From Ophelia neglecta (Eukaryota): a stretch of DNA of 64,000 nt. Within the stretch, counting starts at the first letter, position 1. Each line of letters begins with the position of its first letter. Under the pieces are notes generated by a model. The model saw only the letters and a program-made list of their open reading frames with translations, was not told the origin of the DNA and searched no databases. The translations under genes and the position numbers were made by a program. Of the stretch, positions 22,666 through 64,000 are shown piece after piece. The stretch spans positions 86,800,001 to 86,864,000 of the forward strand of contig OZ260664.1 of the NCBI GenBank assembly GCA_965285935.1. The letters run 5' to 3'.

Positions 22666-22879
22666 ACGCTTGCTTCACCGATGTATGTCATCTGTACATC
22701 GACTTGCAAATGTTTGATTTCATAAGTGTGTTTAATGTTGCGCTTGTAAAGTAAGCGTCACAAGTGCATGGAGATGTTTTATGAAACTAACTGTCTTATG
22801 GTTTATAAGCCCTCCGTTCAATACCTGTTGTCCCTGTTTTAATGACCCAGGCAGTGACTTACTTTTTCCTCGTGGTGAA

Positions 22880-23900
22880 GAGGGGGTGGTAGTGGTGGTG
22901 GTGGTGATGGTGGGTGGGGGGGGGGGAGGGGGGAGGGGGTTTCTGGGAGAGGATGAACCGGCCACCAACAGTGGACGACTTTCATGATCAAAGTGCCAGA
23001 ATTGAAGAGGGGGGGGGGGGCATTAGAGGAAGGTGTTTGTCACCAGGGGGATAGAGGGGGCTAGGGTCAGGCTGGAGGGTTAGAGCCAGCGGGGGGGGGG
23101 GGGGGGGGTTCAGCTCGGGCTTGATGAGGAAGTAGGCGACTCTCCATAAATAATTATATATACATGCATTGAAAATCTATGCAGTCGGACGAGTGCAATT
23201 TCAATTTGGCATGGAATAAAACAACTGAGCGGCCTCAACAATATTATGAAAAGGTTACACCCTGCCATCCTGGAACGACCCCGTGTTGAGATGGTGTGTG
23301 CTGCGTGGTAATTTTTATTTTTATTTTATGAGCTGGGAGGTGCGGGGGGGGGGGGGATTAGAGTCACTCGAATAGTGGTGATAGGGAGGCTGACTGTCAG
23401 AGAAAGGAGAATCAGCTGTAGGAAGGAAAAGGAGTCGGATGAGGTGGAGTATATGACATGACAGTCGTCTAGGGGGGGGGAGTGGGGCTGAAGGTAGGCT
23501 TAAGAACAGGGGCTGAGTGTAAGTTCGGGGGGGGGGGGTGAGAAGAGGGGGAGGTTGAAATACGGAAACAGGTAGGTGGGGGAAGGGGGGGGGGTATCGA
23601 AGGGGTGAGAGTCCAATGGCTGGAATTGGGGTGGGTAAGTGGAGTAACAGGGAGGGCCATGGGGGCTGGTGAAATACATCAGGGGAGATTGGGGGTGGGG
23701 GGGGGGGGTCGCATGGGCAGAGTAGAGGGGCTGAGAGTCATGAGTCAGGTGGGGAGCAATGAGGGAGATGAGAAGTGGGGGGAGAGTCAGCTGGGTGAGA
23801 ATAGGTGGGGGGGGGGGGGTTGTAGTGAATGATGAGAGTAAGCTGGGAAAAATGTTTGGGAAGATGGGAAGATTTGAAGAGGGAACAAAATATGTGGGGA
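22880..23900 (+). repeat. G-rich low-complexity tract
   Basis: Many G5-G16 runs; Pro-rich ORFs on the - strand are compositional artefacts. Confidence 0.8.
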
Positions 23901-24119
23901 AAATAATCAAACGATAGCACGGAGAGGTTGAAAATTATGGTGGGGCCAACTGTAGACTTTCATTTGGTTCACTTGAGAATTTTGCGGTATGGAAATCCAA
24001 TGCTTTGTTTTTCAGTAAACGAAATCACACTTTTATTATTATTATTTTATTATTATAACACCTGGTCATTCGTACTATATTGCAAATTAATAAATACCAA
24101 CGTTCAATAGGCGTTTAAG

Positions 24120-37100: not shown

Positions 37101-37149
37101 AATAGACGGATATAGTTAGAATGTATAGACACAAACAACTAGATGTATA

Positions 37150-37530
37150 TGTAGTACACACAGACAGGAACCTGTAGAACACACAGACAGGTACAGGTAG
37201 AACAGACAAACAGGTACATAAAGACCACAGATATAGATACAAGTAGGACAGACAGACAGGTTCAGGTAGAAAACATACAAATACATGTAGAACACACAGA
37301 CAGGTACAGGTAGAACACAGACAGATACAGGTAGAACACACAGACAGGTACAGGTAGAACACACAGACAGGTACAGGTAGAACACAGACAGATAAAGGTA
37401 GAACACAGAGACAGGTACAGGTAGAACACACAGACAGATACATGTAGGACAGACAGACAGGTACAGGTAGAACACAGACAGATACAGTTAGAACACACAG
37501 ACAGATACAGGTGGAACACAGACAGATATG
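37150..37530. repeat. About 22-24 bp minisatellite (ACAGACAGGTACAGGTAGAACAC)
   Basis: About 16 degenerate tandem units. Confidence 0.9.
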
Positions 37531-37626
37531 CAAATCTGAAATATGGCAATTGGCTCTACGTGTAATTTACTAGTTCTGTATCAACCACATAGGTAAAATG
37601 AAAATGTGCTCAATGCCACAGCTTAC

Positions 37627-43274: not shown

Positions 43275-46200
43275 CTTAGACAAAAAAGGTAAAGCCATTT
43301 AAATTGGCAAACGGATTTCGACAAAAATGTTATGCCTTTAGACAAGTATAAAATTACGTAAAATAGTCTCCTATTCAGTTCTTCAATCATTCTTAAGCAA
43401 TGCAACCACTGGCCAATTCTGTGTCGATGAGCCTGTTTCAAAAGTATATAGCACTAGCGAATCAAGAACACCGATATAGCGAATCAAGAAAATTGAAGGG
43501 TAAAAAATAACATTTTGACGGAAATTGACCAATATTCACTGAATAATACTGCCATCACACAATGATTAGCTAATAATTAAATCAATTGTACCTTTTCCGT
43601 CGACCGAGGTATGTGGTTTATCAGTATGATCCATCGTGTTTTCTGTAAAATTAACAATGTTGTAAATCAAAAATTAAATACGCTAAAAGACTTTATTTCT
43701 TATTATATAATTTCATGTAAGGATTTGGTCGATGTGTCGAATAGTTTACTTTAATAATGCCTATAGTTTTGCTACATATTATATAAGATGAAAGATGAAA
43801 TTACACAAGAAAAAGAAAATACATGAACAAGGAGGTCAAGATACACCCTAAAGATGGAACTGTACTTATAAATGGAAATACATTGGATTTGAAAGAAACT
43901 TTCATTTTTATTAACCCAATACAATTTAGAACCATCATTGCTTTGATAATATGAGAACGTCATCTTAGGTGTTGGGGTGTTGCGCTTGGGTGTTGCAAGG
44001 CAGTGCAACACTCAATAGAAATAAAGTTGTTCATTCAGATTCAGCGCATCTTTCGTGGGGGTCCCTCGGCGATTCGGCCTCGGGCCCGTACATTTCTATA
44101 TGTATATGCTGCCACTGGGACTCTTCGCCGCTATGGGGTTTAATATGCATATCTATACATTCGGATGATGCCCAATCTATCTGGTTTTGAAGCGCCTGCC
44201 TGCAGAATCTATTGGTCGGGGTATTTCTGCCATTGAATTTTGTATAGTTGCTGTGCAGAAATGGATGACCCACAACTTCCTGTAGCTTTACTCTGACAAG
44301 GACGAGATCATAATCTTTGGACAGAAAAATCCACTGGCTTATGCAATGTTTCTTCACATTCCGGGGGACACACGACGGTCATTACTTAAACTAATTCGAT
44401 TGGTAATCTGGGAGTTATGTATGACAGCTGTCTAAGCATGGACGCCCAAGTGTCGAGTGTGGTTGTGTCAATCACATTCCACTTTCGCAACATCTCGTGT
44501 ATCATGAAATCATAAGACACCGAAAACACCAAAATACATATTGCTCTTTTTACGTCTCGACTGGACTACTGCCATTCTCTAGAGTGGTGTTTCCTTGGTA
44601 TTAAAGTGCAGGCTTCAACGGGTCCAAAACTGGGCGGCTCGTCTTCTGTAGTCTCCAGTAGGAGAGACCATATCTTGGAAACCGGGATAATTGCATATGT
44701 GGCACATGATTATGTATAGCCCCTTGCTAGGTGTGTTAAATATTGTATCAGCAATGCAAACCATGACCTTGTTTTTCACCACGTACGCCGATAATATTCT
44801 TTTGCGTTGTAAGAAAGACGAATTTTTCTTACATTTAAATTATTATCTTGAGAATTTACATAACTTCCCCCTTTCTTTGGAGTAGTAAAATACCCTTAGC
44901 CGAAATCTTCCGCCACTCGATCCGGTAATTAATTATATCCGCGAAATGCGGATATTATGGAATCAGTAGCACCGCCGCCGCCGCCGCAGATTTTATTGAG
45001 CTTATTGGACTGTGAATCCAGGTCTGGTGTTTAAGTCTCGCCAGACCCAATTTTCATTCATTTCTTTCAGTTTTTAATTCATTTTAAACTAGAATACCAT
45101 ATGCCGTTATTGTACTATTCTAAAAGCATACACATGGGAAAGTTAGCTGACAGCTAGCTGTACGTAGTTCATAAAACAGGTACTAGTTTAGTTAAAATGC
45201 ATCACCTGGGATCTAAATCTTATATATATATGTTGTGCATTTAAAAGACATGCATATATAGTCAACGTACGAATATATTTGATATAAAGTTTTCCTTTCG
45301 ATTGCACGTGGTTGACTAGCCAAGATGCAGAGCTTCCCCATTATGCCTAAATTGTTAGGGCCAATCTCATCGCATGGTACAAATACGTCATATGGCCGTC
45401 ATTAAAACTCGGTTTACATCCCCTGGAAAGCTGCCGGCCGGCTGTGATTATCGATAGAGGTTTATGTCAGCGAGTAGCGTATTGGACATCACCTCTGCTA
45501 CGATGGAAACCATAATCGCTTCTTCATAAGCTATATCCTTTGAAATAAATCCTATAAATTCGATGCTTCCTTAATTTTTTGACAGTGGATACTATTAGGC
45601 ATAGAATGAGTTATTGATACAAGTGGTCGCCGTTGTAACCAGTATCTAAGACTAATTCATGTCGACAAGTTCGAAGGTAATATGTGTAATTTTTTTGTGT
45701 GCTAGAGTAAGTATCGAAATAAAGGTGGGATTCCACTCTGGAAACAATTAACATTCTTACTTAATATCAAGAGGGATATTTCGCTTCAGTTATGTCTCTG
45801 AGTAATTTATATAAAAAATAAGCCGAACACTTAATTTAGATGGAAAGGAGACGATTTCTCAAAAAACTTGATTAATTAACTACTTAATCAACATACAACA
45901 TTGAGGACATACATTATGTTAGAATCAATTTCTAGAACTTCGAGGAATTTGGCACACCTCTTTTTTTCTTCTAAAAGCCTACATTATAAGCCTACCCCTA
46001 TATTTCAGCCATAAAGATGATTAATAGAACAGTTACTACCGCCTCACTTTTATATTTTACAAATCAATCCCGATAAAAGTGCAATTTGGGTTTATAATCT
46101 TAATTGGGAATTGGTAGTTGCTGAAATTACTATATGGAAAGGACAGTGTTAAACATGACATTTCGGAGCGTAGCTGTTGTTGACAAATATAAGCCGAAAC

Positions 46201-49200
46201 CTCAAACAAGTTGTTCAGCACATGCTTTTGAACTAGGTCATATCAATTGGGCCAATATTGGTAAAGAAAGTTTCAGATAGTGGTCTTAAAACTTTACTAC
46301 GTTTTTGGCATTTCAAGATAAATTATGTGTTAAATCTACCCATGACATTCGCATAGCATATTTATTTCATCATTAAGCTTGTAGCAAAGTTTTGGAGTAC
46401 ATGACACAACCAAAAATACCATAATCTTTCGTCAGACGTAAGAATTTTCAATCAGCTTATATAATCATGTATTTTCAGATTTATTTTCTTTTCTTACCTT
46501 TGTTACTTCCTGACTTCATTTGTGCATCCTGTTCGTTCATGTTATTCCCTGGAAAACAATGAGTGAATTTGTGAAATCAGTTAATCTAATTAATGAATGC
46601 AAGGCTAATTCTTCTAGCAATTATTCCATTATGTTTCTACTTATGGTTTCTACTACCCATGACATTTGCATAGCATATTTATTGGATCATTAAGCTTGTA
46701 GCCATGTTTTGGGGTACATGACACACACCAAAATACCATAATCTTTCGTCAGACGTAAGGATTTTCAATCAGCTTATATAATCATGTATTTTCAGATTTA
46801 TTTTATTTTCTTACCTTTGATACTTCCTGACTTCATTTGTGCATCCTGTTCGTTCATTTTATTCCCTGGAAAACAATGAGTGAATTTGTGAAATCAGTTA
46901 ATCTAATTAATGAATGCAAGGTTAATTCTTCAAGCAATTATTCCACTATGTCTCTACTTAGGTATCACGAGACTTGGGGAGACAAAATCACAAGGGCTAC
47001 ACATCTGTAGATAAAGTTTCATATTACATATTTTACAAGGCACTGAACACTGGACGAAGAATCATTCGTGGTGATTAATCACCACTCTGGTTTGACAGGC
47101 CGGTAAGGCATAACTTAGCTTCTGTAATTTGTAGCGATTTAGATGAAATAAATTATGTCTGTACATTTTTGTTTACATATCAATGGAGTTAGAACTGATG
47201 CATGAGAATACAAAACTTTCTTTCCTTAATATAATAAACCAGGCACATTTTCTAACACTGCTCCGTCCTTTGGTCTTATGTCCAATCCAAGTTCATACCT
47301 ATCTACTAAATTTATGAGGTAAAGGACCGTTTTCTAAGGTTTTCAATGGCAAAGGGCCGTTTACAAAATAATCCGGATCCTTCCATAGTTTGTTCAGCAT
47401 ATTATTTTTATCTTGTTTATATCAATTACGTCACAATAAGGAACAATGGTTTGTCTAGAACTTCGAGAAATTCGGCACACATCTTCGTTCCTTCTAAAAG
47501 CCTACATTATAAGCCTACCCCTATTTTTCAGCCATAAAATGATTAATAAAACAGTTCCTACCGCCTCAAAAATTATAGGGTTATGACACAAATCAATCCC
47601 GGTAAAAGGGTATTTTGGGTTTATAATTTTAATTGGGTATTGTTAGTTGCTAAAATAACTACATGGAAAGGACAGTTTCAAACATGACATTTCGGAGCGT
47701 AACTGTTGCAGACAAATATAAACCGAAACCTCAAACAAGTTGTTCAGCACATGCTTTTAAATTAGCTCACATCAATTGCGCCAATATTGGTAAAGAAAGT
47801 TTGAGACAGTGGTCTTAAAACTAGTCGACTAGGTTTTTGTCATTTTAAGATAAATAATATGTCAAACCTACCCCTGCATGCGCATATTTATTAAATCATA
47901 AAGCTTGTGGCCATGTTTTGGGGCACATGACACACTAAAAATATCATATTCTTTCGTCAGATGGAAGAATTCTCAATCAGTTATATAATCATGTATTTTC
48001 AGATTTATTTTATTTTCTTACCTTTGTTACTTCCTGACCTCATTTGTGCATTCTGTTCGTTCATTTTTTTTCCTGGAAAACAATAAGTGAAATTGTGAAA
48101 TCACTTAATATAATTAATGGATTCACGGCCAATTCTTCTAGCAATTATTCCACTATGATTCTACTTAAGTATCACGAATCTTGGGGCCTACATCACAAGG
48201 CCTACATAAGAAACACACACCTCTTTTTTTTTCTAAAAGCCTACATTATAAGCCTACCCCTATATTTCAGCCATAAAGATGATTAATAAAACAGTTACTA
48301 CCGCCTCACTTGTATATGGTTGTAACACATATCATATAAAAGTCTTAAAACTTTACTACGTTTTTGGCATTTCAAGATAAATTATGTGTTAAATCTACCC
48401 ATGACATTCGGTATTCCAAGTTTCAAGTTTTATTCAAGTTTTATTCCCTCATGGCACCTCCCGGAGCATAGAGTAAAAACTCAATAAATACAATAGGTAG
48501 GATAAATAAGGCAGATACAATAAATATCACATATATGTACATATGCCTGTGAACCAGTATACAATTAATCTATAATTTTATAAGTGATTGAATCTAGAAC
48601 TTGTGGACAATACCAGATTTGCTGATAAATAAGGCTAGTTGTTTCTGTAAGTTATCACATTTGAACATGCAACCAAATTTGAACATGCTGACATTCGAGA
48701 GGTAGTAAGGAGGTATATGTTTAGCTCGGAGGCTAATAAAATCCTCATGTTTACATTCAATAAAGATGTGGAATTCTTCCCCCAACTTGCCAATGTTACA
48801 TTTATTACAAAAACGTTCATTTCTTGGTACTTTACTGTACCTGCCTGTCTCAACAGGTAACTTATGATTACTCAAGCGGAATTTGCACAGTGATGTTGCC
48901 AAGTCAGAAGGGAGATCTGTGAGATATCTCTCCAACCCAAATTTACTTTTAAATGCTTTCTAGGTAGAGCATATAGGTAGACTAATGACATCTGAAAGCC
49001 ACTTTTGCTCAAACTGATCACTTAGTGTTCTCTTTACTTTAAGCTTTAACCATTTAGGATTGAAATTCTGGGTGACAGAGAAGAAACTACTATTACCGGT
49101 TTCATCTAGAATCTTTTTGATACTATTTACCCATGGGCTTTGATACCGTTGGTTTACATTCATCTAAAAAAAAATACTTGTACAATCTGGAACTAAGTTT

Positions 49201-52200
49201 ACTTGACTTTCCTGTTACAAGACCTGCCAAGAAACCAATCATTCTAGTTTTGATATGGACACTGATAGGGTGCCTACCTAGTTCACCATATACCATAGTG
49301 TTACAAGTAGCCCTCTTCACTTTAAGCATGTATATACAGAATTGGAGTGGGCAGCCTCAATTATAATATTGTCACCACTTCCCCATATTTCACAGCCATA
49401 TGTCAGTATAGGCAGTACGCATAGCATATTTATTACATCATTAAGTTGTAGCCAAGTTTTGGGGTACATGACACACACAAAAATACCATAATCTTTCGTC
49501 AGACGTAAGAATTTTCAATCAGCTTAGATAATCATGTATTTTCAGATTTATTTTCTTTTCTTACCTTTGTTACTTCCTGACTTCATTTGTGCATCCTGTT
49601 CGTTCATGTTATTCCCTGGAAAACAATGAGTGAATTTGTGAAATCAGTTAATCTAATTAATGAATGCAAGGCTAATTCTTCTAGCAATTATTCCATTATG
49701 TTTCTACTTATGGTTTCTACTACCCATGACATTTGCATAGCATATTTATTGGATCATTAAGCTTGTAGCCATGTTTTGGGGTACATGACACATACAAAAA
49801 TACCATAATCTTTCGTCAGACGTAAGAATTGTCAATCAGCTTATATAATCATGTATTTTCAGATTTATTTTATTTTCTTACCTTTGTTACTTCCTGACTT
49901 CATTTGTGCATCCTGTTCGTTCATGTTATTCCCTGGAAAACAATGAGTTAATTTGTGAAATCAGTTAATCTAATTAATGAATGCAAGGCTAATTCTTCTA
50001 GCAATTATTCCATTATGTTTCTACTTAAGTATCACGAGACTTGGGGAGACGTAAAACACAAGGCCTACACATCTGTGGATAAAAGTTTCATATTACATAT
50101 TTTACAAGGCACTGAACACTGGAAAAAAGAATCATTCGTATTGATTAATCACCACCCTGGTTTGACAGGCCGGTAAGGCATAACTTAGCTTCTGTAATTT
50201 GTAGCGATTTAGATGAAATAAATTATGTCTGTACATTTTTGTTTACATATCAATGGAGTTTGAACTGATGCATGAGAATACAAAACTTTCTTTCCTTAAT
50301 TAAATAAACCAGGCACATTTTCTAACACTGCTCCGTCCTTTGGTCTTATGTCCAATCCAAGTTCATACCTATCTACTAAATTTATGAGGTAAAGGACCGT
50401 TTTCTAAGGTTTTCAATGGCAAAGGGCCGTTTACAAAATAATCCGGATCCTTCCATAGTTTGTTTAGCATATTATTTTGATCTAGTTTATATCAATTACG
50501 TCACAATAAGGAACAATGGTTTGTCTAGAACTTCGAGAAATTCGGCACACATCTTCGTTCCTTCTAAAAGCCTACATTATAAGCCTACCCCTATTTTTCA
50601 GCCATAAAATGATTAATTAAACAGTTCCTACCGCCTCAAAAATTATAGGGTTATGACACAAATCAATCCCGGTAGAAGGGTATTTTGGGTTTATAATTTT
50701 AATTGGCTATTGTTAGTTGCTAAAATTACTACATGGAAAGGACAGTTTCAAACATGACATTTGGGAGCGTAACTGTTGCAGACAAATATAAACCGAAACC
50801 TCAAACAAGTTGTTCAGCACATGCTTTTAAATTAGCGCACATCAATTGCGCCAATATTGGTAAAGAAAGTTTGAGACAGTGGTCTTAAAACTAGTCTACT
50901 AGGTTTTTGTCATTTTAAGATAAATAATATGTCAAACCTACCCCTGCATGCGCATATTTATTAAATCATAAAGCTTGTGGCCATGTTTTGGGGCACATGA
51001 CACACTAAAAATATCATATTCTTTCGTCAGATGGAAGAATTCTCAATCAGTTATATAATCATGTATTTTCAGATTTATTTTATTTTCTTACCTTTGTTAC
51101 TTCCTGACCTCTTTTGTGCATTCTGTTCGTTCATTTTTTTTCCTGGAAAACAATAAGTGAAATTGTGAAATCACTTAATATAATTAATGGATTCACGGCC
51201 AATTCTTCTAGCAATTATTCCACTATGATTCTACTTAAGTATCACGAATCTTGGGGCCTACATCACAAGGCCTACATAAGAAACACACATCTATTTTTTT
51301 GTCTAAAAGCCTACATTATAAGCCTACCCCTATATTTCAGCCATAAAGATGATTAATAAAACAGTTACTACCGCCTCACTTTTATATGGTTGTAACACAA
51401 ATCATATAAAAGTCTTAAAACTTTACTACTTTTTGGGCATTTCAAGATAAATTATGTGTTAAATCTACCCATGACATTCGCATAGCATATTTATTACATC
51501 ATTAAGCTTGTAGCCAAGTTTTGGGGTAAATGACACACACAAAAATACCATAATCTTTCGTCAGACGTAAGAATTGTCAATCAGCTTATATAATCATGTA
51601 TTTTCAGATTTATTTTATTTTCTTACCTTTGTTACTTCCTGACTTCATTTGTGCATCCTGTTCGTTCATGTTATTCCCTGGAAAACAATGAGTGAATTTG
51701 TGAAATCAGTTAATCTAATTAATGAATGCAAGGCTAATTCTTCTAGCAATTATTCCATTATGTTTCTACTTAAGTATCACGAGACTTGGGGAGACGAAAT
51801 CACAAGGCCTACATATCTGTGGATAAAGTTTCATATTACATATTTTACAAGGCACTGAACACTGGAAAAAAGAATCATTCGTATTGATTAATCACCACCC
51901 TGGTTTGACAGGCCGGTAAGGCATTACTTAGCTTCTGTAATTTGTAACGATTTAGATGAAATAAATTATGTCTGTACATTTTTGTTTACATATCAATGGA
52001 GTTAGAACTGATGCATGAGAATACAAAACTTTCTTTCCTTAATTAAATAAACCAGGCACATTTTCTAACACTGCTCCGTCCTTTGGTCTTATGTCCAATC
52101 CAAGTTCATACCTATCTACTAAATTTATGAGGTAAAGGACCGTTTTCTAAGGTTTTCAATGGCAAAGGGCCGTTTACAAAATAATCCGGATCCTTCCATA

Positions 52201-55200
52201 GTTTGTTCAGCATATTATTTTGATCTAGTTTATATCAATTACGTCACAATAAGGAACAATGGTTTGTCTAGAACTTCGAGAAATTCGGCACACATCTTCG
52301 TTCCTTCTAAAAGCCTACATTATAAACCAACCCCTATTTTTCAGCCATAAAATGCTTAATAAAACAGTTCCTACCGCCTCAAAATTTATAGGGTTATGAC
52401 ACAAATCAATCCCGGTAAAAGGGTATTTTGGGTTTATAATTTTAATTGGGAATAGTTAGTTGCTAAAATAACTACATGGAAAGGACAGTTTCAAACATGA
52501 CATTTCGGAGCGTAACTGTTGCAGACAAATATAAACCGAAACCTCAAACAAGTTATTCAGCACATGCTTTTAAATTAGCTCACATCAATTGCGCCAATAT
52601 TGGTAAAGAAAGTTTGAGAGAGTGGTCTTTAAACTAGTCGACTAGGTTTTTGTTATTTTAAGATAAATAATATGTCAAACCTACCCCTGCATGCGCATAT
52701 TTATTAAATCATAAAGCTTGTGGCCATGTTTTGGGGCACATGACACACTAAAAATACCATATTCTTTCGTCAGATGGAAGAATTCTCAATCAGTTATATA
52801 ATCATGTATTTTCAGATTTATTTTATTTTCTTACCTTTGTTACTTCCTGACCTCATTTGTGTATTCTGTTCGTTCATTTTTTTCCCTGGAAAACAATAAG
52901 TGAAATTGTGAAATTACTTAATATAATTAATGGATTCACGGCCAATTCTTCTAGCAATTATTCAACTATGTTTCTACTTAAGTATCACGAATCTTGGGGC
53001 CAACATCACAAGGTTACATAAGAAACTCACATTTTTCTTCTTCTAAAAGCCTACATTATAAGCCATCCCCTATATTTCAGCCATAAAGATTATTAATAAA
53101 ACAGTTACTACCGCCTCACTTTTATATGGTTGTAACACAAATCAATCCCGATACAAGTGCAATTTGGGTTTATAATCTTAATTGGGAATTGGTAGTTGCT
53201 AAAATTACTATATGGAAAGGACAGTGTTAAACATGACATTTCGGAGCGTAGCTGTTGTTGACAAATATAAGCTGAAACGTCGAACAAGTTGTTCAGCACA
53301 TGCTTTTGAACTAGGTCATATCAATTGCGCCAATATTGGTAAAGAAAGCTTCAGATAGTGGTCTTAAAACTTTACTACGTTTTTGGCATTATAAGATAAA
53401 TTATGTGTTGAATCTACCCATGACATTCGCATAGCATATTTATTACACCATTAAGCTTGTAGCCAGGTTTTGGGGTACATGACACACACAAAAATACCAT
53501 AATCTTTCGTCAGACGTAAGAATTTTCAATCAGCTTATATAATCATGTATTTTCAGATTTATTTTCTTTTCTTACCTTTGTTACTTCCTGACTTCATTTG
53601 TGCATCCTGTTCGTTCATGTTATTCCCTGGAAAACAATGAGTGAATTTGTGAAATCAGTTAATCTAATTAATGAATGCAAGGTTAATTCTTCTAGCAATT
53701 ATTCCACTAAGTTTCTACTTAGGTACCACGAGACTTGGGGAGACAAAATCACAAGGCCTACACATCTGTAGATAAAGTTTCATATTACATATTTAACAAG
53801 GCACTGAACACTGGACGAAGAATCATTCGTGGTGATTAATCACCACCCTGGTTTGACAGGCCGGTAAGGCTTAACTTAGCTTCTGTAATTTGTAGGGATT
53901 TAGATGAAATAAATTATGTCTGTACATTTTTGTTTACATATCAATGGAGTTAGAACTGATGCATGAGAATACAAAACTTTCTTTCCTTAATAAAATAAAC
54001 CAGGCACATTTTCTAACACTGCTCCGTCCTTTGGTCTTATGTCCAATCCAAGTTCATACCTATCTACTAAATTTATGAGGTAAAGGACCGTTTTCTAAGG
54101 TTTTCAATGGCAAAGGGCCGTTTACAAAATAATCCGGATCCTTCCATAGTTTGTTCAGCATATCATTTTGATCTAGTTTATATCAATTACGTCACAATAA
54201 GGAACAATTGTTTGTCTAGAACTTCGAGAAATTCGGCACACATCTTCGTTCCTTCTAAAAACCTACATTATAAGCCTACCCCTATTTTTCAGCCATAAAA
54301 TGATTAATAAAACAGTTCCTACCGCCTCAAAAATTATAGGGTTATGACACACATCAATCCCGATAAAAGGGTATTTTGGGTTTATAATTTTAATTGGGAT
54401 TTGTTAGTTGCTAAACTAACTACATGGAAAGGACAGTTTCAAATAATGACATTTCGGAGCGTAACTGTTGCAGACAAATATAAACCGAAACCTCAAACAA
54501 GTTGTTCAGCACATGCTTTTAAATTAGCTCACATCAATTGTGCCAATATTGGTAAAGAAAGTTTGAGATAGTGGTCTTTAAACTAGTCTACTAGGTTTTT
54601 GTCATTTTAAGATAAATAATATGTCAAACCTACCCCTGCATGCGCATATTTATTAAATCATAAAGCTTGTGGCCATGTTTTGGGGCACATGACACACTAA
54701 AAATACCATATTCTTTCGTCAGATGGAAGAATTCTCAATCAGTTATATAATCATGTATTTTCAGATTTATTTTATTTTCTTACCTTTGTTACTTCCTGAC
54801 CTCATTTGTGCATTCTGTTCGTTCATTTTATTTCCTGGAAAACAATAAGTGAAATTGTGAAATCACTTAATATAATTAATGGATTCACGGCCAATTCTTC
54901 TAGCAATTATTCCACTATGTTTCTACTTAAGTATCACGAATCTTGGGGCCTACATCACAAGGCCTACATAAGAAATTTTGTTTAACAATAAAACTAAACC
55001 TCCTTTTCAAGCAATGAACGCAATGCCAGGACAAACAAATTTATCATATTCAAAATCCACCTCCAAATATCAGAAGACCTTAAATAGAAAAAAACAGAAC
55101 TCATAACACTGAGCATAATGTCAACAGTATTAAACAGCCAGCTGCCAAACCGATCATAATAAATTTAACTTGCAGTCTGTAATCACAATCGGATAATTAT

Positions 55201-58184
55201 AAACGCTGCTCAAAATGATTCATATGAACTACATTTGCACATTAACAAACACAAGGAAAGAATTTAAACACGACAGTTAACCGCCGAAGTTCGCTACGTA
55301 CTGAGGGCGATAATCCTTTTCTAGATATTTGCTTATATGGGTCATTCAAAACTGCAAACATACATCGTCTGATGCATTTATGGGCAAATATATTATACTT
55401 CCTTTTAGATAATACAATTTGTTACCATTCCTGGAGGAATATATATGAAAATCAGAATAGCGAATGATTTGCAAAGAACTGTAGTAAACAGGTAGATGTT
55501 TTTAACCCATAATAAAATCAAAGAATATGTAGTTTATAGAGATCGTCAGAAATTGTCAGTCTTCGGTTTTTAAAGCTAAAGTACTGCCTTTCATAGTGGC
55601 GTAAGTATGGTAGGTAATTGAACTATATATACCCTCAACGCCTGCCGTCTCTATTAACGTGTGTTTAGGATGGAATCTCTGGTTTTTGTGATACCTAGTA
55701 GGACAACATATGTAACTACGGTAATAACTATGGCTAGTGTTTCAGCAGTGTATTCTTTGCCAAGAAGAGCAGTTTACCAAGTTAACAAATTGCATTTGGC
55801 ATGTACTGAATTCTTTATATAGCTCCTGGAGACTTGTCCCTTTCACTGCAACTGCCTACTTTATAGTGAAAAGCTGTCAGCCGTGTTCCTAAAATAGTGC
55901 CTACTCTGCAGGTAGAGGGAAGCGATTTACTGTGTGGATTCATAACTTGCCTTTCGTCATAATTTGGCCGATGTCTTCACCCTCCCCCCCCCCCCCTGCA
56001 ACACACACATACACACCCTCCCTTACACACACCCACCCATCCACACACACACAAACCCACACACACATACTCACATCCATTCGCCAAAGTGCGAGCAATT
56101 TAATACTAGCATTTTAAACCAGTAGCCCAATTTCAGTCTTTTTTGAGCAGGCAAATTATGACCATACATCCGTCTTAGATTCCCAGAAGGCACACTCTGT
56201 TGGAATGAGGAAAACTGGTTTATGTTGCCCTGAGAGGTGATTAATGCTGATAAAGCGTCGACCATCGTAGACTCTTCAAGGTCATATATGTTCAATGTTG
56301 ATCACTGACTGGTTTGTTTTGTGTTCTGGCCGGCTCGAGAAAATTATGTTTTCATTGTCTAGTATGTGCATTCCGAGTTTATGTACTAATTGGTAGCTGG
56401 ATATTAATTTCTTGATTATTGTGGGCTATGGCTGTTGGTTCCTGATGATTTCGGAGCGATTTAATGAACTCTTTTGGAATAATGATTAGGTTTGTCTTCC
56501 GGGTACCATTTCCGTTTAAATTGTTTACTGATGAAAGGCCATTGACCTTCAGAATGTTTCTAGAATGCACCATTAGCCGGCAAATTCGTTAAGATGACGG
56601 CCAATTACAAGATGGCTACCATTTTATCATGAAACAATAGAAATATTTACGCAGCCTCAGATAGATAGAGCACCATGTTTTCCTGAAACTTTCTAAAAGT
56701 ATTCACAATTACTTTTGAATCCCAAACATATGTAAATGAGGCATGATTGCAAAGTTACGGTCTCATTTAAATACGACACAAATGGGACTGGAAACCCATA
56801 AGATAAACGTAAATCAGAAGTCAGAAATTTATCCATTAGTTCCCAATTCATCAGTTTCTGGTTCTCATTAAATTCCCCGTTCCGTAACAAAACAAATAAA
56901 ATCTAATCACAAGCAATGAAATTGTTCCAAGGCGTGATTCAATTAAGCAAAAATATGTTTGTGGTCGAAGTACGATGAAAAAAAGGATATAAAATTATAA
57001 GGCTCGACACATTTTTAAAAACCCGTTTTACCTATGTATTGACTCACTTTTTCCAACTTTTTATCAACCTCTACTCATGCTTTTCATTCAGAACAAACAT
57101 ATCTGATCCGTACACCAAGGAAGTCTGTACACAATGAAGCTAACAATCTAAGATTAGAAACACGCTATAAAAATCATGAAACAGACAAATTACACTCCCC
57201 TCTTCGGTACCAATATATACCACACCAAGAATAAATCTTCGTAATTCTTGGGTATTTATAAAATAAGTCATGAATAATAGGAAAAACAGCACCCATATTT
57301 TGCTTATTTAATATTTGAATACATGCATTGTGATTTATTAATAATAACCCGTCGAATAGTACGTAAAGAACGCAGAATGATGACGTAGGATGATCAATTA
57401 CAATTATTGGGTGAATATATAGCAAACTGCATTTCGCCAAAAGCAATACACGTTATACATACACATAATGTTATGTTACGCGAGAGAGCCATTTTTCATT
57501 CTATTGTTCTGAATTACAAATAGAAGTGCAATACGTAAAGACATAGTATTTACCTATTTTTTTTTCAAATCAATTTAATTTATTCAATTGTAATATTATA
57601 TACACTGTTCATTTATAATACTTCGTAAGTTTAGAATTATTAAAACAGCAAAAGAAAAAGAAAATAGCACAAATATAATATAAATAAAAAGGACTGAAAG
57701 CTTAGAGCTTATGTGTCCCTTCCATATCACTAAACAGCATGGCGAAAATTGTTACATGCAGTGTGAATGTGCTAATATGTACAGACAGATAATCGCAGAA
57801 ATTCATTCACGCTTACTAAAAAAAACTCACTACATTACTTACTTGATGTAAGGCATAGTATAATCAATGATGCGATCACTGCGACGCCGATTATACCTCC
57901 AATCACACCGCCGATGATTTTACCGATCTGACTTTCATCTAAAACATTAACCCATAACTTAGTTGAGCGGCAGGTCGTTCACAAAGGAAAAACCCATACA
58001 AATTAATCGCATATGCGCTATGCAAGAATCCCCAGAAAAACATTGCATTTGGGGATATTGATATAGAGATAGTTACAACAACAGAAAAAGCCAGCGCCTA
58101 TAATAGACTTACCAGGTACCGTGGTAGTTTTCAAATCAGGTATATTGGTGGAAGGATTTAGCGTCGAGGTGATTGAAGTGCTAT
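43249..58184 (-). CDS. Gene 2 (3' part): type I membrane protein with Ser/Thr stalk, TM, and cytoplasmic tail of repeated phase-1 mini-exons; integrity uncertain
   Basis: Stalk exon 58113-58184, TM exon 57843-57938, ten 51-nt exons in 46498-54834, diverged 51-nt exon 43592-43642, terminal exon 43249-43274; all phase-1 compatible; connectivity is inferred. Confidence 0.55.
43592..43642 (-). CDS. Gene 2 diverged 51-nt exon (ENTMDHTDKPHTSVDGK)
   Basis: TTTTACAG acceptor, AG|GTAC donor, phase 1-1; shares N2, M4, D8, S13, K17 with the array exons. Confidence 0.6.
44040..44700 (+). mobile_element. Old L2-type RT fragment
   Basis: Decayed GVP..LGP, HSDDAQ (YADDTQ-like) and SRLDYC motifs. Confidence 0.6.
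46498..54834 (-). CDS. Ten 51-nt phase-1 mini-exons (G[NK][NK]MNEQ[DN]AQM[KR]SGSNK)
   Basis: 46498-46548, 46815-46865, 48022-48072, 49565-49615, 49882-49932, 51092-51142, 51627-51677, 52835-52885, 53576-53626, 54784-54834; each has TTGTTTTCCAG and AAG|GTAAG and no stop or indel. Confidence 0.65.
48411..49417 (-). mobile_element. 5'-truncated RTEX-like LINE inserted in the tandem array
   Basis: MVYGELGRHP..FRLSNHKLPVETGRY..CNKC..EEFHIFIEC; tail (AATAAAACTTG)n near 48415-48445; interrupts ACATTCG|CATAGC of the repeat. Confidence 0.88.
57843..57938 (-). CDS. Gene 2 transmembrane exon
   Basis: DESQIGKIIGGVIGGIIGVAVIASLIILCLTS; TTTTAG acceptor, GTAAGT donor, 96 nt phase 1-1. Confidence 0.8.
58113..58184 (-). 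CDS. Gene 2 Ser/Thr-rich stalk exon
   Basis: DSTSITSTLNPSTNIPDLKTTTVP; TTTGCAG acceptor, G|GTAAGT donor, 72 nt. Confidence 0.75.
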
Positions 58185-58822
58185 CTGCAAATAAACAATT
58201 ATGGAAATGAAGAATTCTCACCCACATACAGTTGGCTTCAACAGTTTCTCATATTGTTGGAAGTTGGTCAAAGTGTACAAATTGGAAAAAGAAGGAGACT
58301 GTACTTGGTACTGGTCGCACACTTTGTAGTCGTTCCTATGGATATTCAGCATACATGCTTTAGTTTAATATAGATATTGTCATTCTAGCAAAAATGGTTT
58401 AAATGAATATATACCTATATGGATTTTCGAAATGCCAAAAAACATTCAAACCAAGTCAAATATTAATGCCCCTAAAGCATCACATGTGTACCAAGTCTCC
58501 CACTTTCCGCTATTAATCATACACTGGCTAGTATAATGATATAACCAAGTCGCCCACATTTGTAACCAGTCTCCAAGTGAACATATATCTTATGTCAAAT
58601 TTCAAACTGTTTGTATTTAACACAAACCAACTCTATATCAAATGTGACCTGTTAAATGTATTAAAAGTGAAAACGCCCACATTTGTACCAAGTCTCCCAA
58701 AAACATATATTTCATCAATTTTAAGTATATTAAGTCCAAGCTAACTCACCCATACTTGTAAATATCGCGTTTAATTTTATATTTACTTCTTTATTAAAGA
58801 ACATTTAATAAACATAACAGAC

Positions 58823-61800
58823 GTTTGTTTGATTGATTGATTGATTGTTTTATTATCCTCAACTCAATGAGAGCATTACATTCAATGCAGTAATTCAAAC
58901 AATGTTAACAAGCATAGTTATGTAGAGGGTGAAATATATATACAACAATAATACCGATGCCTACATCGGCGATTCAATCAATGTAGGTACGCTCCAATGG
59001 GTTCACATAACTATATGTGTACATTGATTTACAGAAAAGCCCATAGAATATACACACTTGCTTCAATATAGTATCCAGATCAGATTTATCCATAACTATG
59101 CAACTTTCACCGCCTAAAAGAGTAACAATCAGATCTATATCTACCAAGTGATCCAACTTTACGTAAGTATCCACATTAATTGAGTTACACAGCTCTGTCC
59201 AAAATAGGAGACGCACGTCTGCTAACAAAACACAACCACCTTCACAAAACAAATGACTAAATGGACATAGTACCTCAGATTTACACAGGGCGCATGATAC
59301 TTTTAAACTGTTGTTGTATAAAAAGAAGAGCCACAGTAGGTTAATTACGCGGTTCTGTAACTCTATATTCCGTCTAGCAAACTGGTACAGAACAATTGGA
59401 GACAACTCTTCCCCATAAGCATAGTTATATACGTGACACCCGGGTTTGTTTGACATCGAAAAAGCCCACTGATGTGTTTCTAAAGCACAGATTCCCTCAT
59501 TTATTATCAATTTCCACTCGGATTTCGATGGAAAACTACCAGCATCACAGTATACATGTAAGTATTCCGACAATTCATATTTCTTACATACATTAAAAAT
59601 ATCAGAAACAAAACCATTGACTTTCAAACCTTTACGTGATCTCTCCAAGTATGATCGCAATCTAAGGTTAAATACATCTTTTGCCAAGTGGTTTTCTGAC
59701 AAGTTACACAATTTATTTAAAAGCATCAATTTCCTATTCTCAATTATGCTTTGAATAGACATCCACCCAAGCATACCCCTCGCAATTTCATCATGCATTC
59801 TCAATGGGAAGCCCTGTATGCTTTTCGCGATGAACTTTTGAGTTCGTTCCAACTCTTGCAGTTCCTGTGGAGATAGGTCATTCCACAGTTCGGCTCCATG
59901 GAGAAAGGAGGGGATGCAAATTTTAGTCCAGAGGCCGGCCGATGTGAGTGGGTTCAGGCATGTGGGTTTTATGCCCACTGCAGCCATGCCTGCCATTTGT
60001 CTCCCCGTTTTACACGCCTCCGTTGTTCTCAGAGAAGACGATAAGTACGAGCAGAGGGTAATACCCACGTGGGTCTCGTGTGTGACCTCTTCCAGATTCT
60101 CCGAGTATAGCTTCCACTGGCGCAGTTCCATGTTCTTGGCATTACTGATTTTCTTCTCACCAAATACTAATACTCTGCTTTTAGCTACAGAGAAGCGTAG
60201 GCGCCACATTCTTGAGTACAAATCAGCGGAGTCCAGCATTCGCTGCAACCCTGAGACGGTTGGGGACATCAGGGCGGTATCGTCTGCTAAGGTAGGTGAG
60301 CCCACGTCTATGCCATCTACGACTAGCCCATCTCCGTTACTTCCAACGTGCTCGTGTATGTCCATGTAGGATACAGAGTACAAAACATGGAGAGCATGTC
60401 TCCCTGTTTAATACTACGAGATATTGGAAACTCATTTGACATTGAGCCGCTGACCAGTACAGACATTGTAGATCCAACTAGGGTCATTCGGATCAGATGC
60501 CAAAGTTTACCGGTGACACCTAACCGGAAGACCTTCAGAAGAAGGCCATCCCACCAGACACGATCGAACGCCTTTTCAGAGTCCAGCAGGGCCACATAAA
60601 CCTTGCTTCCCCTTTCTATAAAGTGGTGAATGGATTCTTGAACAAAAAATGACAACATTATATTGCTGGATTCCTTTTTCGAGTGCTGTAGTTTGCATGG
60701 AAATTGTATGTCATGGAGAAGTGGTTGCCATCTGGTCCATATCAGCTTTTCGTCAATTTTATAATTGTTGGTAATAGCGTGATACCTCTATAAGAATTCT
60801 TGTCTGTTTTCTGTTTGTTTTTACCTTTGTACATGGGAATAATCACTCCAAGCTTGAAGGCCTTAGGGATGTATACAGCAGAAGTCATTTCGTTGAACAG
60901 ATGGCATAGCATCCGTACACAGATCGGACTGGCGTATTTTAGATGTTCGTAACGAATATTGTCCCACCCCGGTGCTTTACCATTGGGAAGGCCTCTAACA
61001 GCAGTCGGGATTTCATCCGCAGTTATGGGCGCCTCAAGGATTTCGAGCGTGTCCGTCTCCTTGCTCTGTGAGGTAAGCAGGGCCTGAACCTCCTCCTTTA
61101 CGGTAGCTGCGAACACTTCGTCATAGTCACACGATTCACAGTGTTGTTCATTGAGAAGCTGGTTAAAATGTTCTCCCCAAAAATCCCGCAGTTCCACAGG
61201 TGTACGGTAGGTAGCATCCCCGTTTTTGATTAGGTGTAGAGACTCTGGGGTCTTACGATTTCTACGAACATACCTCCAAAAGGAGCGGAGGTCGAATTCA
61301 CTCTGGTGTTGGGCTTTCTCGTAGCGTTCATGTTGACGGCTGTTAGACTTGGCATATTGTTTTATTCGAAATTTCGTTTTTGCCGACTTGTATTCCCTAT
61401 AAGAATCATATTCCGGACCTCTGGGTTTACCTTCTTTAACCCACACAGTGCGTTTTTGTAGCTGAAGTTTGTGAACCAGTTCTAGCGCGTCATCCCAGTA
61501 GTCGTTCTGATACGACTTTACAGCGTACTTCGGAACAGCACAATCCGACGCTTTTATCAGAGCATCACTAAGGATGTTTGCCAGTTCGTCAATTTTCTTT
61601 TCAGGTAGGTTCGTTTCTCCAAGTTGGTGTGTCATAAGTATATTATCCAAAGCTTGGGTATAGGCTAATTTATTAATTTTACCCCAATTTAGGTTGATTC
61701 TCTATGCACAGGTATGCCTGGGAAGGTGACATGTGACTTTACAGTATACAGGTAAGTGATCTGATGTATTCAAAGTATCCAACATTACCTTACAACAACT

Positions 61801-63517
61801 AACATCCGGTATCAACTGCTCTGGGACACATATGTGGTCAATCATGGTATATTGACCTCTGTTATGGGATAGATGCGTGTACCGTGGCCCGGAGCAAATA
61901 GACAAGTCACACACAGTATTACATCTACAATTCTCAAGAAGCGACTGGAAACCCGCAACCCGTTTTTCGACACCACTGCCATTTTCCAAGTACATGTTTA
62001 AACTTTGTGAGTTAAAGTTGCCAGCGAACAGTACAATCCCAACTTGTTCATAATATGTATGTACATTAACGACACTTTGAAGACAAATGTCATATTCATC
62101 TCTTGAGACAAATCAGTGCTCGGCATATAAACATTAAACAAATAAACATCTTGCGTACCAATAGAATGGGACAGACAGATACCTATGATGCGATCATCAC
62201 CTACATCATGCAGTTTTGAGACAGCATATGCTATGTCATTTCGCCACATTATGGCTACGCCACCAGCTCTACCATGATTTAGAGACTCCATTCGTCTATC
62301 TACACGAGCGAATACATTAAATCGGGGATCTTACATACTTAAAAATGAGAATGTTGCATCATTGAGATGGTGCTCTTGTAGACATAATATGTCACACTTG
62401 TCTAGCAGAGAACAGATATACGTCGCTGAGGCCATAGCACCCCAACAGTTAAATGTGATTACACGTAACGAATCCATATTTACAGCAATACACACGAAAA
62501 ACATACAATATGCAATATTCAGATTCATTTCTCTCATCTTAAAATACATTAACTTTTCATTTCATAAGACCATGGCCTTATTTTCACGCCTTCTGGCCAA
62601 AATAGTTCGTTTCCTACCGATTCAGCATCGTCAGGTTTAACATTTATTTTGAAAGAAAGATAACGACCAGTACTTTTTAGCATTTTGCTGTAGGTAATAT
62701 GAATTCCTTTATATTCTAGATGGTCTTTGACTAGTCTATATGTGTGCTCTGCATTAGATTTCAGTCTAATGCTCCCAAGATAATAAGCTACACTTCTTTC
62801 CTTTCTGCCGATAACTGTGAAGCCCTCCAGGTTCTCATCGTGGTCTTTTTCAGAAGCACTTTGGTAACCATCTTTATTCTTGCGAGTGATGAGTTCTCCT
62901 AGTGGGGTTCCATCTACATTTACTCGACAGTAGTCGTATGTCACGGCTCTGTAGTGCTTGAGATCAGCCGCCGCGAACCTTTCGCACATGGTTTTGACGA
63001 ACTCTTCCCTTGGTAGGTGACCAAACTTTTCCTTAATAGTATTGATAATGTCCTCTTCAGTTTGGGTCGGTGTGAAGACTTCATCTTCGCTCTCAGACAT
63101 AGTGCTCGCTGACGGGACACCACTGGTACTACTAGGGATATCAATGGAGCAGAACCTCCATGGACGATACTACTAGTCCGTTTACTCGGCCAGCCGGCTT
63201 TCACACCTTTCACCTTTCACCTCCGGGGTCCACCGACGGACGGCTTTTACAGTTTATCACAGCAAACAACTTGTATTATTGCTGTTTCTTGGGCGATAAT
63301 ACAACGCCTGAACTTGGATATTTAATAAAGTTCTTAAAATACCTATAATGTGATCATTTCTTAGGTACCAAAATGCGTCCTCCTTTTCCGCAAGTTGTTC
63401 CGTGAAAGGCTGTCACAGATCTGTATATCTTTAGACTGATATATGATGGAGAAAACTCAGGTTTTCTACGAGCCGCTATGGAATGAACCAGTCATCGCGT
63501 AACCCGTATACATCAGT
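58823..63517 (-). mobile_element. Near full-length non-LTR retrotransposon (ORF1 + APE-RT ORF2; clade uncertain, RTEX-like), frameshifted
   Basis: ORF1 62549-63100; APE (TFNCWG, LCLQEH, VYMP, IDH, SDHLPV); RT (KAPGWD, YRGITLL, DSEKAFDRV, KQGDMLS, LADDTAL); AATAAA and (AATC)n tail at 58823-58853. Confidence 0.92.
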
Positions 63518-64000
63518 ACACCGCCGATGATTTTACCGATCTGACTTTCATCTAAAACACTAACCCATAACTTAGTTGAGCGGCAGGTCGTTCACAAAGG
63601 AAAAACCCATACAACTTAATCGCATATGCGCTATGCAAGAATCCCCAGAAAAACATTGCATTTGGGGACTCTAATATATATTAATATAGAGATAGTTACA
63701 ACAACAGAAAAAGCCAGCGCAATAGACTTACCAGGTACCGTGGTAGTTTTCAAATCAGGTATATTGGTGGAAGGATTTAGCGTCGAGGTGATTGAAGTGC
63801 TATCTGCAAATAAACAATTATGGAAATGAAGAATTCTCACCCACATACAGTTGGCTTCAACAGTTTCTCATATTGTTGGAAGTTGGTCAAAGTGTACAAA
63901 TTGGAAAAAGAAGGAGACTGTACTTGGTACTGGTCGCACACTTTGTAGTCGTTCCTATGGATATTCAGCATACATGCTTTAGTTTAACATAGATATTGTT
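63518..64000 (-). repeat. Second copy of 57905-58380 (intact stalk exon 63732-63803, TM exon truncated by the LINE)
   Basis: Near-identical to 57905-58380 with a few SNPs and small intronic indels; runs off the window end. Confidence 0.95.

What the first reader, a model, noticed from the sequence alone, without database searches (positions are those of the whole stretch)
45931..54974. A 9-kb satellite that is an array of ten intact in-frame mini-exons of a receptor cytoplasmic tail
Seen: each A and B subunit carries, on the minus strand, TTGTTTTCCAG | 51 nt | GTAAG, phase 1-1, encoding variants of GNNMNEQDAQMKSGSNK / GKKMNEQNAQMRSGSNK. All ten keep exactly 51 nt, including across an A-homopolymer whose composition differs between copies, and none has a stop. 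They lie downstream of a phase-1 TM exon on the same strand. Inference: the intracellular tail of gene 2 is built by satellite expansion. Since every cassette is symmetric, any subset can be spliced in frame, so tail length could vary between alleles (copy number) and isoforms (exon skipping). A repeat masker would hide this, and the exons are below the ORF-track cutoff.
Basis: partly seen in the sequence, partly recalled or inferred. Interest (0 to 1): 0.88.

Follow-up and report, generated by a model that had tools for sequence, protein, structure and literature searches.

The report
Young tandem array of exon copies
A 9-kb local tandem duplication has copied one tiny 51-base exon, with both splice sites, ten times behind a membrane-anchor exon of an orphan gene; the copies look intact because they are young, not because selection keeps them, and nothing yet shows that they are used.

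Summary
Ten copies of TTGTTTTCCAG + 51 nt + GTAAG lie on the minus strand (0 expected by chance). All are open in only one frame, the phase 1-1 frame that fits the transmembrane (TM) exon 3 kb upstream. The array is nested, unique to this locus in the 762-Mb genome, and has no decayed copies.

- The exon has changed as fast as its intronic flanks (0.196 vs 0.222 changes per site).
- Eight of its ten changes are nonsynonymous, which is the neutral ratio.
- The longest invariant block lies in the intron.
- Under neutrality all ten copies stay intact about 10% of the time.

No RNA run exists for this organism in the tools, so splicing is untested. "Receptor" is unsupported. I found no ectodomain or signal-peptide exon within 24 kb upstream. 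The TM exon has no relative among 1.84 billion proteins or elsewhere in its own genome. The 17-aa unit carries no tyrosine motif. A LINE with a segmental duplication has rearranged the TM exon region.

Best reading: a young, neutral, intragenic tandem amplification of a probably genuine cassette exon. This is a known kind (LPA KIV-2, NBPF, nebulin). An earlier report of this scan found related splice-junction arrays elsewhere in this genome.

The parts
45953..54975 (-). Nested tandem array. Four higher-order units run [B core, 1208 nt, A core, 535-741 nt], with start-to-start periods of 1743, 1948 and 3070 nt. Two units carry an extra 317-nt A duplication. The array holds ten copies of a core of about 250 nt.
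   Evidence: unique to this locus in the genome
54784..54834 (-). Mini-exon copy 1 (first in transcription order), B type, encodes (R/G)NKMNEQNAQMRSGSNK. Its upstream flank runs into unique sequence.
53576..53626 (-). Mini-exon copy 2, A type
52835..52885 (-). Mini-exon copy 3, B type (Ala to Thr variant)
51627..51677 (-). Mini-exon copy 4, A type
51092..51142 (-). Mini-exon copy 5, B type (Met to Lys variant)
49882..49932 (-). Mini-exon copy 6, A type
49565..49615 (-). Mini-exon copy 7, A type, 317 nt after copy 6
48413..49418 (-). 5'-truncated LINE fragment in sense orientation with an (AAACTTGAAT)-like 3' tail. It is inserted cleanly into the intron after copy 7, between GCTATGCG and AATGTCATGG, which are contiguous in the other A units.
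   Evidence: loose ends table 7
48022..48072 (-). Mini-exon copy 8, B type
46815..46865 (-). Mini-exon copy 9, A type (Asn to Lys and Asn to Ile variants)
46498..46548 (-). Mini-exon copy 10 (last), A type
57843..57938 (-). Complete TM exon, 96 nt, phase 1-1, ttttag|AT...CAA|gtaagt
58113..58184 (-). Ser/Thr-rich stalk exon, 72 nt, phase 1-1, encodes (D)STSITSTLNPSTNIPDLKTTTVP, ttgcag|...|gtaagt
58831..63517 (-). LINE of about 4.7 kb in sense orientation. Its ORFs are broken into pieces and it has a (CAAT)n tail. It lies between the two copies of the stalk/TM segment.
   Evidence: RVT_1
63518..64000 (-). Upstream copy of the duplicated segment. It holds the stalk exon copy 63732-63803 and a TM exon copy cut after 34 nt (63518-63551). 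The copy runs on to about 65150 beyond the window.
45652..45737 (-). Candidate next or terminal exon, unverified. The acceptor taattgtttccag lies 200 nt past the array, and the phase-1 frame is open for 28 codons to a TAG.
   Evidence: read by eye; no independent support

Best explanation
A young, locus-specific, nested tandem duplication has copied a genomic segment ten times. The likely mechanism is unequal crossing-over or replication slippage, with an ancestral unit of about 0.74 kb that later grew into higher-order units of 1.7-3.1 kb. The segment holds one genuine-looking 51-nt, phase 1-1 cassette exon, the first cytoplasmic exon after the TM exon of an orphan single-pass membrane-protein gene. 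Each copy carries the complete splicing kit, so if the gene is transcribed most copies would probably be spliced in. That would give a tail of up to about 170 residues made of a polar, tyrosine-free 17-aa unit. The intactness of the copies is a consequence of their youth: they evolve neutrally, and no selection for the tail or for its length is visible. Shown here: the anatomy, the uniqueness of the array, the neutral substitution pattern and the rearranged gene context. Inferred: that the template exon is a real exon, that copies are spliced, and the duplication mechanism.
For: - Ten exact matches against 0 expected.
- Nested repeat structure.
- Only these ten copies exist in the window and in the genome, none decayed and no retrocopy.
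- Parsimony changes per site: flanks 42/189 = 0.222, exon 10/51 = 0.196.
- A vs B identity is 90.2% in the exon and 86.3%, 96.3% and 87.1% in the flanks. Among B copies the exon is less conserved (96.1%) than its flanks (98-100%).
- Eight nonsynonymous to two synonymous changes, against a neutral expectation of 84:16.
- P(no stop) is 0.56, P(no indel) 0.45 and P(AG/GT untouched) 0.41, so the joint probability is about 0.10.
- The longest invariant block (27 nt) is intronic. The splice-site blocks are 14 and 13 nt.
- The stalk, TM and mini-exons are all phase 1-1 with near-consensus splice sites.
- Introns between copies are 266-1492 nt, long enough for splicing (spacings).
Against: - No RNA data of any kind, so neither exon identity nor inclusion is shown.
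- The 16 splice-site positions have 0 changes where 3.6 are expected (P about 0.03). This could hint at selection on splicing, but the window was chosen post hoc and longer invariant intronic blocks exist.
- Gene conversion among copies could mimic youth.
- The gene has no identified start, ectodomain or verified terminal exon, so it may be a fragment or a pseudogene.
Confidence: 0.6

Rival explanations
1. One reading: the array is a functional, selected design. All or variable subsets of the ten cassettes are spliced into the cytoplasmic tail of a receptor, and tail length varies by allele (copy number) and isoform (exon skipping) with a phenotypic effect.
For: The exons are symmetric, so any subset keeps the frame. 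All 16 splice-site positions are invariant across ten copies (P about 0.03). The junction with the TM exon gives a basic stop-transfer sequence. Known precedents of this kind exist (LPA KIV-2, NBPF, nebulin; own knowledge).
Against: The exon is no more conserved than its introns and dN/dS is about 1. No receptor ectodomain, homologue or signalling motif was found. The unit has no Tyr, so no ITAM, ITIM or ITSM is possible. No alternative junctions or indels appear in DNA contigs of the one sample available. This genome is reported to make junction arrays at many loci (earlier finding s1-733622), which fits a mutational by-product.
Confidence: 0.12
2. The cassettes are not used at all. Gene 2 is a dead or fragmentary gene, a relic stalk/TM/tail fragment in a cluster of Ig-superfamily genes that a LINE insertion and segmental duplication have disrupted. 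The array is then junk tandem duplication inside a former intron-exon region.
For: - A LINE of 4.7 kb sits in sense orientation exactly where one copy of the TM exon is cut after 34 nt.
- No upstream ectodomain or signal-peptide exon was found in 24 kb.
- The TM exon has no hit among 1.84 billion representative proteins, where an exact match (46.9 bits) should have been detectable.
- No verified terminal exon.
- Substitutions are neutral.
Against: One complete stalk exon and one complete TM exon with perfect splice sites remain downstream of the LINE, which could simply be intronic. None of the ten copies has lost a splice site, the frame or its length. Orphan genes with short exons are easily missed by the crude exon scans used here.
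Confidence: 0.25

Closest known systems
Coding multi-exon tandem arrays inside genes: human LPA kringle IV-2 repeat (5.5-kb unit with two exons), NBPF Olduvai exon doublets and triplets, the nebulin triplicated region, CR1 long homologous repeats (own knowledge, not tested here)
   Same: A kilobase-scale tandem genomic unit carries whole exons with both splice sites. The exon length per unit is a multiple of three, so any copy number keeps the frame. The array has a higher-order repeat structure and high identity between copies.
   Different: In those cases inclusion in mRNA and allelic copy-number variation are demonstrated and the unit encodes a folded domain. Here the unit is a single 17-aa low-complexity cytoplasmic peptide, the host gene is an orphan, and neither splicing nor polymorphism is shown.
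[quoted passage not shown] The earlier finding s1-733622 reports similar arrays in this same genome.
   Same: Local tandem duplication seeded at exon-intron junctions inside genes. The duplicates carry splice signals and show the turnover typical of tandem repeats.
   Different: Mirage units are 10-160 bp and span only one boundary (part of an exon plus part of an intron). Here each unit holds a whole exon with acceptor and donor, the units are 317-3070 bp, and the copies could therefore be included in frame.
Tandemly duplicated alternative exons, such as mutually exclusive exon clusters (Dscam1 and others) and the tandem exon duplication origin of alternative splicing (own knowledge)
   Same: Tandem copies of one exon with equal length and phase.
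   Different: Those copies are diverged and encode alternative versions, with mechanisms that enforce the choice of one. Here the copies are 90-100% identical, so choosing among them gives almost no diversity, and no selector or docking elements were sought or seen.
Modular repeated-exon proteins such as titin PEVK exons and the 54-bp collagen exons (own knowledge)
   Same: Short symmetric exons arose by tandem duplication, encode a repetitive unstructured segment, and allow length variation by exon skipping.
   Different: Those arrays are ancient, conserved across species and under selection. This one is young, confined to one locus and neutral in pattern.

Membership tests
Coding exon-containing tandem array (LPA KIV-2 / NBPF type) | The tandem genomic unit contains complete exon(s) with both splice sites | tested here: met
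   Ten units each have CAG|51 nt|GTAAG plus a pyrimidine tract and a CTGAT branch-point candidate
Coding exon-containing tandem array (LPA KIV-2 / NBPF type) | The exon content of a unit keeps the reading frame at any copy number | tested here: met
   51 nt, phase 1-1, open in that frame only, in all ten copies
Coding exon-containing tandem array (LPA KIV-2 / NBPF type) | The copies are spliced into the mature mRNA | not testable with these tools
No RNA run holds the stretch. The 31-aa ORF is too short for the protein search.
Coding exon-containing tandem array (LPA KIV-2 / NBPF type) | Copy number varies between alleles | tested here: inconclusive
   Three DNA runs of one sample, held as short contigs, show no joints or indels over 49400-55399. 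Contigs cannot span the repeats and only one individual was sampled.
Mirage-type splice-junction minisatellite | The repeat unit spans a single exon-intron boundary, with part of the exon and part of the intron | tested here: not met
   The unit holds the whole exon and both boundaries. Definition from PMC3087553.
Mirage-type splice-junction minisatellite | Minisatellite-size unit (10-160 bp) | tested here: not met
   The smallest period is 317 nt and the higher-order periods are 1743-3070 nt
Satellite DNA | Long homogeneous arrays, usually at many loci or in large blocks | tested here: not met
   Ten core copies (four higher-order units) at one locus only in 762 Mb
Cell-surface receptor with a signalling tail | Signal peptide and a recognisable ectodomain upstream of the TM exon | tested here: not met
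   No Ig-like or other long open exon lies between window coordinates 64000 and 87900. The nearest Ig exons (about 90-100 kb) are followed by their own TM exon at about 88 kb. The exon scans were crude.
Cell-surface receptor with a signalling tail | A known cytoplasmic signalling motif (ITAM, ITIM or ITSM tyrosines, a death or TIR domain, and so on) | tested here: not met
   The 17-aa units contain no Tyr and are polar low-complexity sequence

The most novel reading that the evidence does not exclude
The cassettes are real exons of a living orphan membrane-protein gene. Several or all ten are spliced in, and copy number differs between alleles. That would make it an invertebrate coding tandem array with the smallest known unit (one 17-aa exon), building a cytoplasmic tail of variable length and caught at an early, still neutral stage of protein-repeat birth.
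Probability: 0.25. Interest if true: 0.55.

Novelty: new member of a known kind. Interest (0 to 1): 0.3.

Why it matters
If the copies are spliced, the locus would be a clean snapshot of how a repetitive protein segment is born. One symmetric mini-exon is amplified by genomic tandem duplication before any selection acts, and the protein gains 17 residues per copy. It also warns annotators: repeat masking would hide ten splice-competent exons, and intactness alone must not be read as constraint. As it stands it is an anatomically neat but probably neutral structural variant in an orphan, rearranged gene. It sits in a genome that an earlier report of this scan describes as prone to duplications at exon junctions.

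Tried and rejected
- RNA evidence: the look-up of sequencing runs listed only three runs of one sample, none on record as RNA. Laying their contigs gave no joints and no indels, and it cannot measure copy number.
- Annotation or protein evidence: the TM exon (31 aa) against 1.84 billion representatives gave 0 hits.
- Paralogues: DNA and protein searches of the organism's own genome with the repeat unit, a back-translated MNEQxAQM pattern, the stalk/TM segment and the TM peptide found only this locus. There was one 1-mismatch chance hit on C2 and some weak matches to a low-complexity intron.
- Older decayed copies: a sensitive blastn of the higher-order unit and of the core against the flanks and the whole window found none.
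- Ectodomain hunt: stop-to-stop ORFs, tblastn with neighbouring Ig exons and two crude splice-site scans over 24 kb upstream gave nothing convincing.
- A 51-nt phase 1-1 open interval at 43592-43642 (ENTMDHTDKPHTSVDGK) looked like a diverged paralogous cassette. It shares only 22 of 51 nt and has a weak donor (GTACAA). By my rough estimate about nine such AG..GT intervals are expected by chance in 6 kb, so I rejected it as evidence.
- Plus-strand ORFs inside the array (48044-48286, 49955-50176, 51114-51356) have no Pfam match above threshold.
- Rejected the idea that the array unit is a dispersed transposon or satellite, because it occurs only here.
Full report
**1. The observation**

A pattern search for TTGTTTTCCAG, any 51 nt, GTAAG finds exactly ten matches, all on the minus strand. 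None is expected in 100 dinucleotide-preserving shuffles. The ten exon intervals are listed under parts.

Only one of the three frames of the 51-mer is open. It is the frame in which the first two bases complete a split codon and the last base starts one (phase 1-1). In that frame the six A copies read (G)NNMNEQDAQMKSGSNK and the four B copies read (G)KKMNEQNAQMRSGSNK, each with single-residue variants.

The A-rich start of the exon differs between copies by substitutions only: GGAATAAC, GGAATAAA, GAAAAAAA, GGAAAAAA and GAAATAAA. Contigs of three DNA runs show no inserted or deleted letters over 49400-55399 (table 4).

**2. Anatomy of the array**

Tandem Repeats Finder and the repeat finder, with a ten-way alignment, show a nested structure.
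- The core is about 250 nt: roughly 100 nt of intron, the exon, then about 105-150 nt of intron. It occurs ten times.
- In transcription order the array runs B, 1208 nt, A, 741 nt, B, 1208 nt, A, 535 nt, B, 1210 nt, A, 317 nt, A, 1543 nt, B, 1207 nt, A, 317 nt, A.
- This amounts to four higher-order units [B...A...], with periods of 1743, 1948 and 3070 nt. Two of them carry an extra 317-nt A duplication.
- A 1-kb 5'-truncated LINE fragment (48413-49418) is inserted cleanly into one intron.
- A and B cores are about 90% identical. Copies of the same type are 95-100% identical.

A sensitive blastn finds exactly ten copies in the window and no decayed ones, in the flanks or elsewhere. In the whole 762-Mb assembly, the unit and a back-translated MNEQxAQM pattern occur only here. 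The one other pattern hit, on C2, has a mismatch and looks like chance. "Satellite" is therefore a misnomer: this is a young, single-locus tandem amplification.

**3. Are the units exons?**

Evidence from the sequence alone is good but circumstantial.
- Each copy has a CTGAT branch-point candidate about 28 nt upstream of the AG. It also has a pyrimidine tract (14-15 of 20), the acceptor CAG|G and the donor AAG|GTAAGA.
- Introns between copies would be 266-1492 nt.
- Three kb upstream on the same strand lies a 96-nt exon, ttttag|...|gtaagt, that encodes a glycine-rich transmembrane helix. Before it lies a 72-nt Ser/Thr-rich stalk exon, ttgcag|...|gtaagt. Both are phase 1-1.
- The last base of the TM exon (A) plus the first two bases of the first cassette (GA) make Arg. 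The helix would then be followed by R-N-K, a normal stop-transfer sequence.
- The TM exon of the neighbouring Ig/FN3 gene (about 6827-6924 by my reading) has the same phase and a similar helix start, [11 protein letters not shown]. This exon style is therefore used in this gene cluster.

**4. Is intactness more than recent duplication gives?**

No. On a maximum-likelihood tree of the ten cores, parsimony counts are as follows.

| Region | Changes | Sites | Changes per site |
|---|---|---|---|
| Intronic flanks | 42 | 189 | 0.222 |
| Exon | 10 | 51 | 0.196 |
| Splice-site positions | 0 | 16 | 0 |

- A-versus-B identity is 90.2% in the exon, against 86.3% upstream and 96.3% and 87.1% downstream. 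Among B copies the exon (96.1%) is less conserved than its flanks (98-100%).
- Of the ten exon changes, eight are nonsynonymous and two synonymous. Random non-stop substitutions would give 84:16.
- Only 5-6% of possible substitutions create a stop. Given ten hits, P(no stop) is therefore 0.56.
- With three indel events in 189 flank nt, P(no indel in 51 nt) is 0.45.
- P(no hit in the four AG/GT bases) is 0.41.
- The joint probability that all ten copies stay intact under neutrality is about 0.10.
- Zero changes in all 16 flanking consensus positions has P of about 0.03. However, that window was defined post hoc as the invariant block, and the longest invariant block of the alignment (27 nt) is intronic, with the splice blocks second and third at 14 and 13 nt.

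It is met.

**5. Is gene 2 a receptor, and is it alive?**

I could not find the rest of the gene.
- In the 24 kb upstream, up to the TM exon of the next gene at window coordinate about 88 kb, there is no long open exon. tblastn with the neighbouring Ig exons gives no match there, and I found no convincing signal-peptide exon.
- The only other candidate is a 45-nt phase 1-1 exon at about 65136-65180, outside the window.
- The TM exon has no hit among 1.84 billion representative proteins. An exact match scores 46.9 bits and should have been detectable. It has no paralogue in its own genome either.
- The 17-aa unit has no tyrosine and no recognisable motif.
- The region is rearranged. A segment with the end of the 45-nt exon, the stalk exon and the first 34 nt of the TM exon occurs twice, at about 65150-63518 and at 58830-57905. 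The aligned parts differ by three substitutions and two indels.
- A sense-oriented LINE of 4.7 kb with broken ORFs lies between the two copies (58831-63517).
- A complete stalk exon and TM exon survive downstream of the LINE, so the gene may still work with the LINE inside an intron. It may equally be a relic.
- No verified terminal exon follows the array. The best candidate is an acceptor at 45737 with 28 open codons.

**6. Transcript evidence**

None is available. The run search returned three runs of one sample that hold 62-70% of the words of a mostly intronic 10-kb stretch. That share means they are DNA, and none is on record as RNA. Their contigs confirm the sequence of the array but are too short to span repeats. 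No joints were seen.

The exon-by-exon route failed because the cassette and its surrounding open frame (31 aa) are below the minimum query length.

**7. Most likely mechanism**

Unequal crossing-over or replication slippage duplicated a segment of about 0.74 kb around a cassette exon, and the two products diverged by about 10% into the A and B types. The B-A pair, with about 0.45 kb of extra sequence, was later amplified to four units at 1-4% divergence. There followed two local 317-nt duplications and a LINE fragment insertion.

Every copy inherited identical near-consensus signals and adequate introns. The default expectation is therefore that the spliceosome would include most of them if the gene is transcribed. 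That step is inference.

Nothing indicates that the tail or its length is under selection. An earlier report of this scan (s1-733622) states that this genome carries splice-junction tandem arrays at more than 15 loci. I did not test that claim. If true, it supports a mutational propensity over a design.

**8. Comparison with known systems**

The closest kind is the coding, exon-containing intragenic tandem array: LPA kringle IV-2, NBPF Olduvai, the nebulin triplicated region and the CR1 long homologous repeats (own knowledge). Of its defining features, two are met here (a whole exon with both splice sites, and frame kept at any copy number). One could not be tested (splicing) and one was inconclusive (allelic copy number).

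It is not a "mirage". Those units span one exon-intron boundary and measure 10-160 bp (PMC3087553). It is not a satellite in the usual sense, and it is not a Dscam-like cluster, because the copies are nearly identical.

**9. Verdict**

It is not supported in its stronger parts: receptor identity, a tail built by expansion as a functional feature, and intactness as evidence of use.

Novelty: a new member of a known kind, if it is used at all. Interest is 0.3. The locus is worth a look once RNA data exist for this species, which an earlier report of this scan calls probably an annelid (not tested here).

Noticed in passing
window 57905-58830 and 63518-64000 (continuing to about 65150 outside the window), with 58831-63517 between: A segment of about 0.9-1.6 kb is present twice, flanking a sense-oriented 4.7-kb LINE with a (CAAT)n tail and broken ORFs. 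The segment holds the end of a 45-nt exon, the stalk exon and the first 34 nt of the TM exon. This is far longer than a normal target-site duplication. The upstream copy carries about 0.6 kb more of a GGGAGACTTGGTACAAATGTGGGCG-like minisatellite.
   Followed up: partly
window 6800-22500, minus strand: Large multi-exon Ig/FN3 gene (Pfam Ig_3, I-set, C2-set_2, fn3). By my reading its TM exon lies at about 6827-6924 and encodes [34 protein letters not shown], phase 1-1. A LINE (Exo_endo_phos, RVT_1) lies just downstream at 3786-6098 on the same strand.
   Followed up: partly
window coordinates about 87900-100000 (outside the window; loci L014, L036): Another gene with Ig-like exons (about 99650-99890 and 90170-90690) and its own TM exon at about 88003-88160. 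The window therefore lies in a cluster of single-pass Ig-superfamily genes, all on the minus strand.
   Followed up: partly
window 43592-43642, minus strand: A solitary 51-nt, phase 1-1 open interval with AG and GT borders (ENTMDHTDKPHTSVDGK). It has the same length and phase as the cassettes but only 43% nucleotide identity and a weak donor, so it is probably chance.
   Followed up: partly
window 37015-37566, minus strand: Imperfect tandem repeat that gives long Cys/Leu/Val/Ser-rich open frames in all three frames (…CLCVLPVPVCVFYLYLSV…). It is most likely a non-coding minisatellite.
   Followed up: no
window 22001-24000: A composition outlier (GC 0.48, GC skew +0.33) with a proline-rich minus-strand open frame at 23500-23910.
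   Followed up: no
window 55990-56079: A poly-G run followed by an imperfect (GT)n/(GTGG)n microsatellite, in the intron between the TM exon and the array.
   Followed up: no
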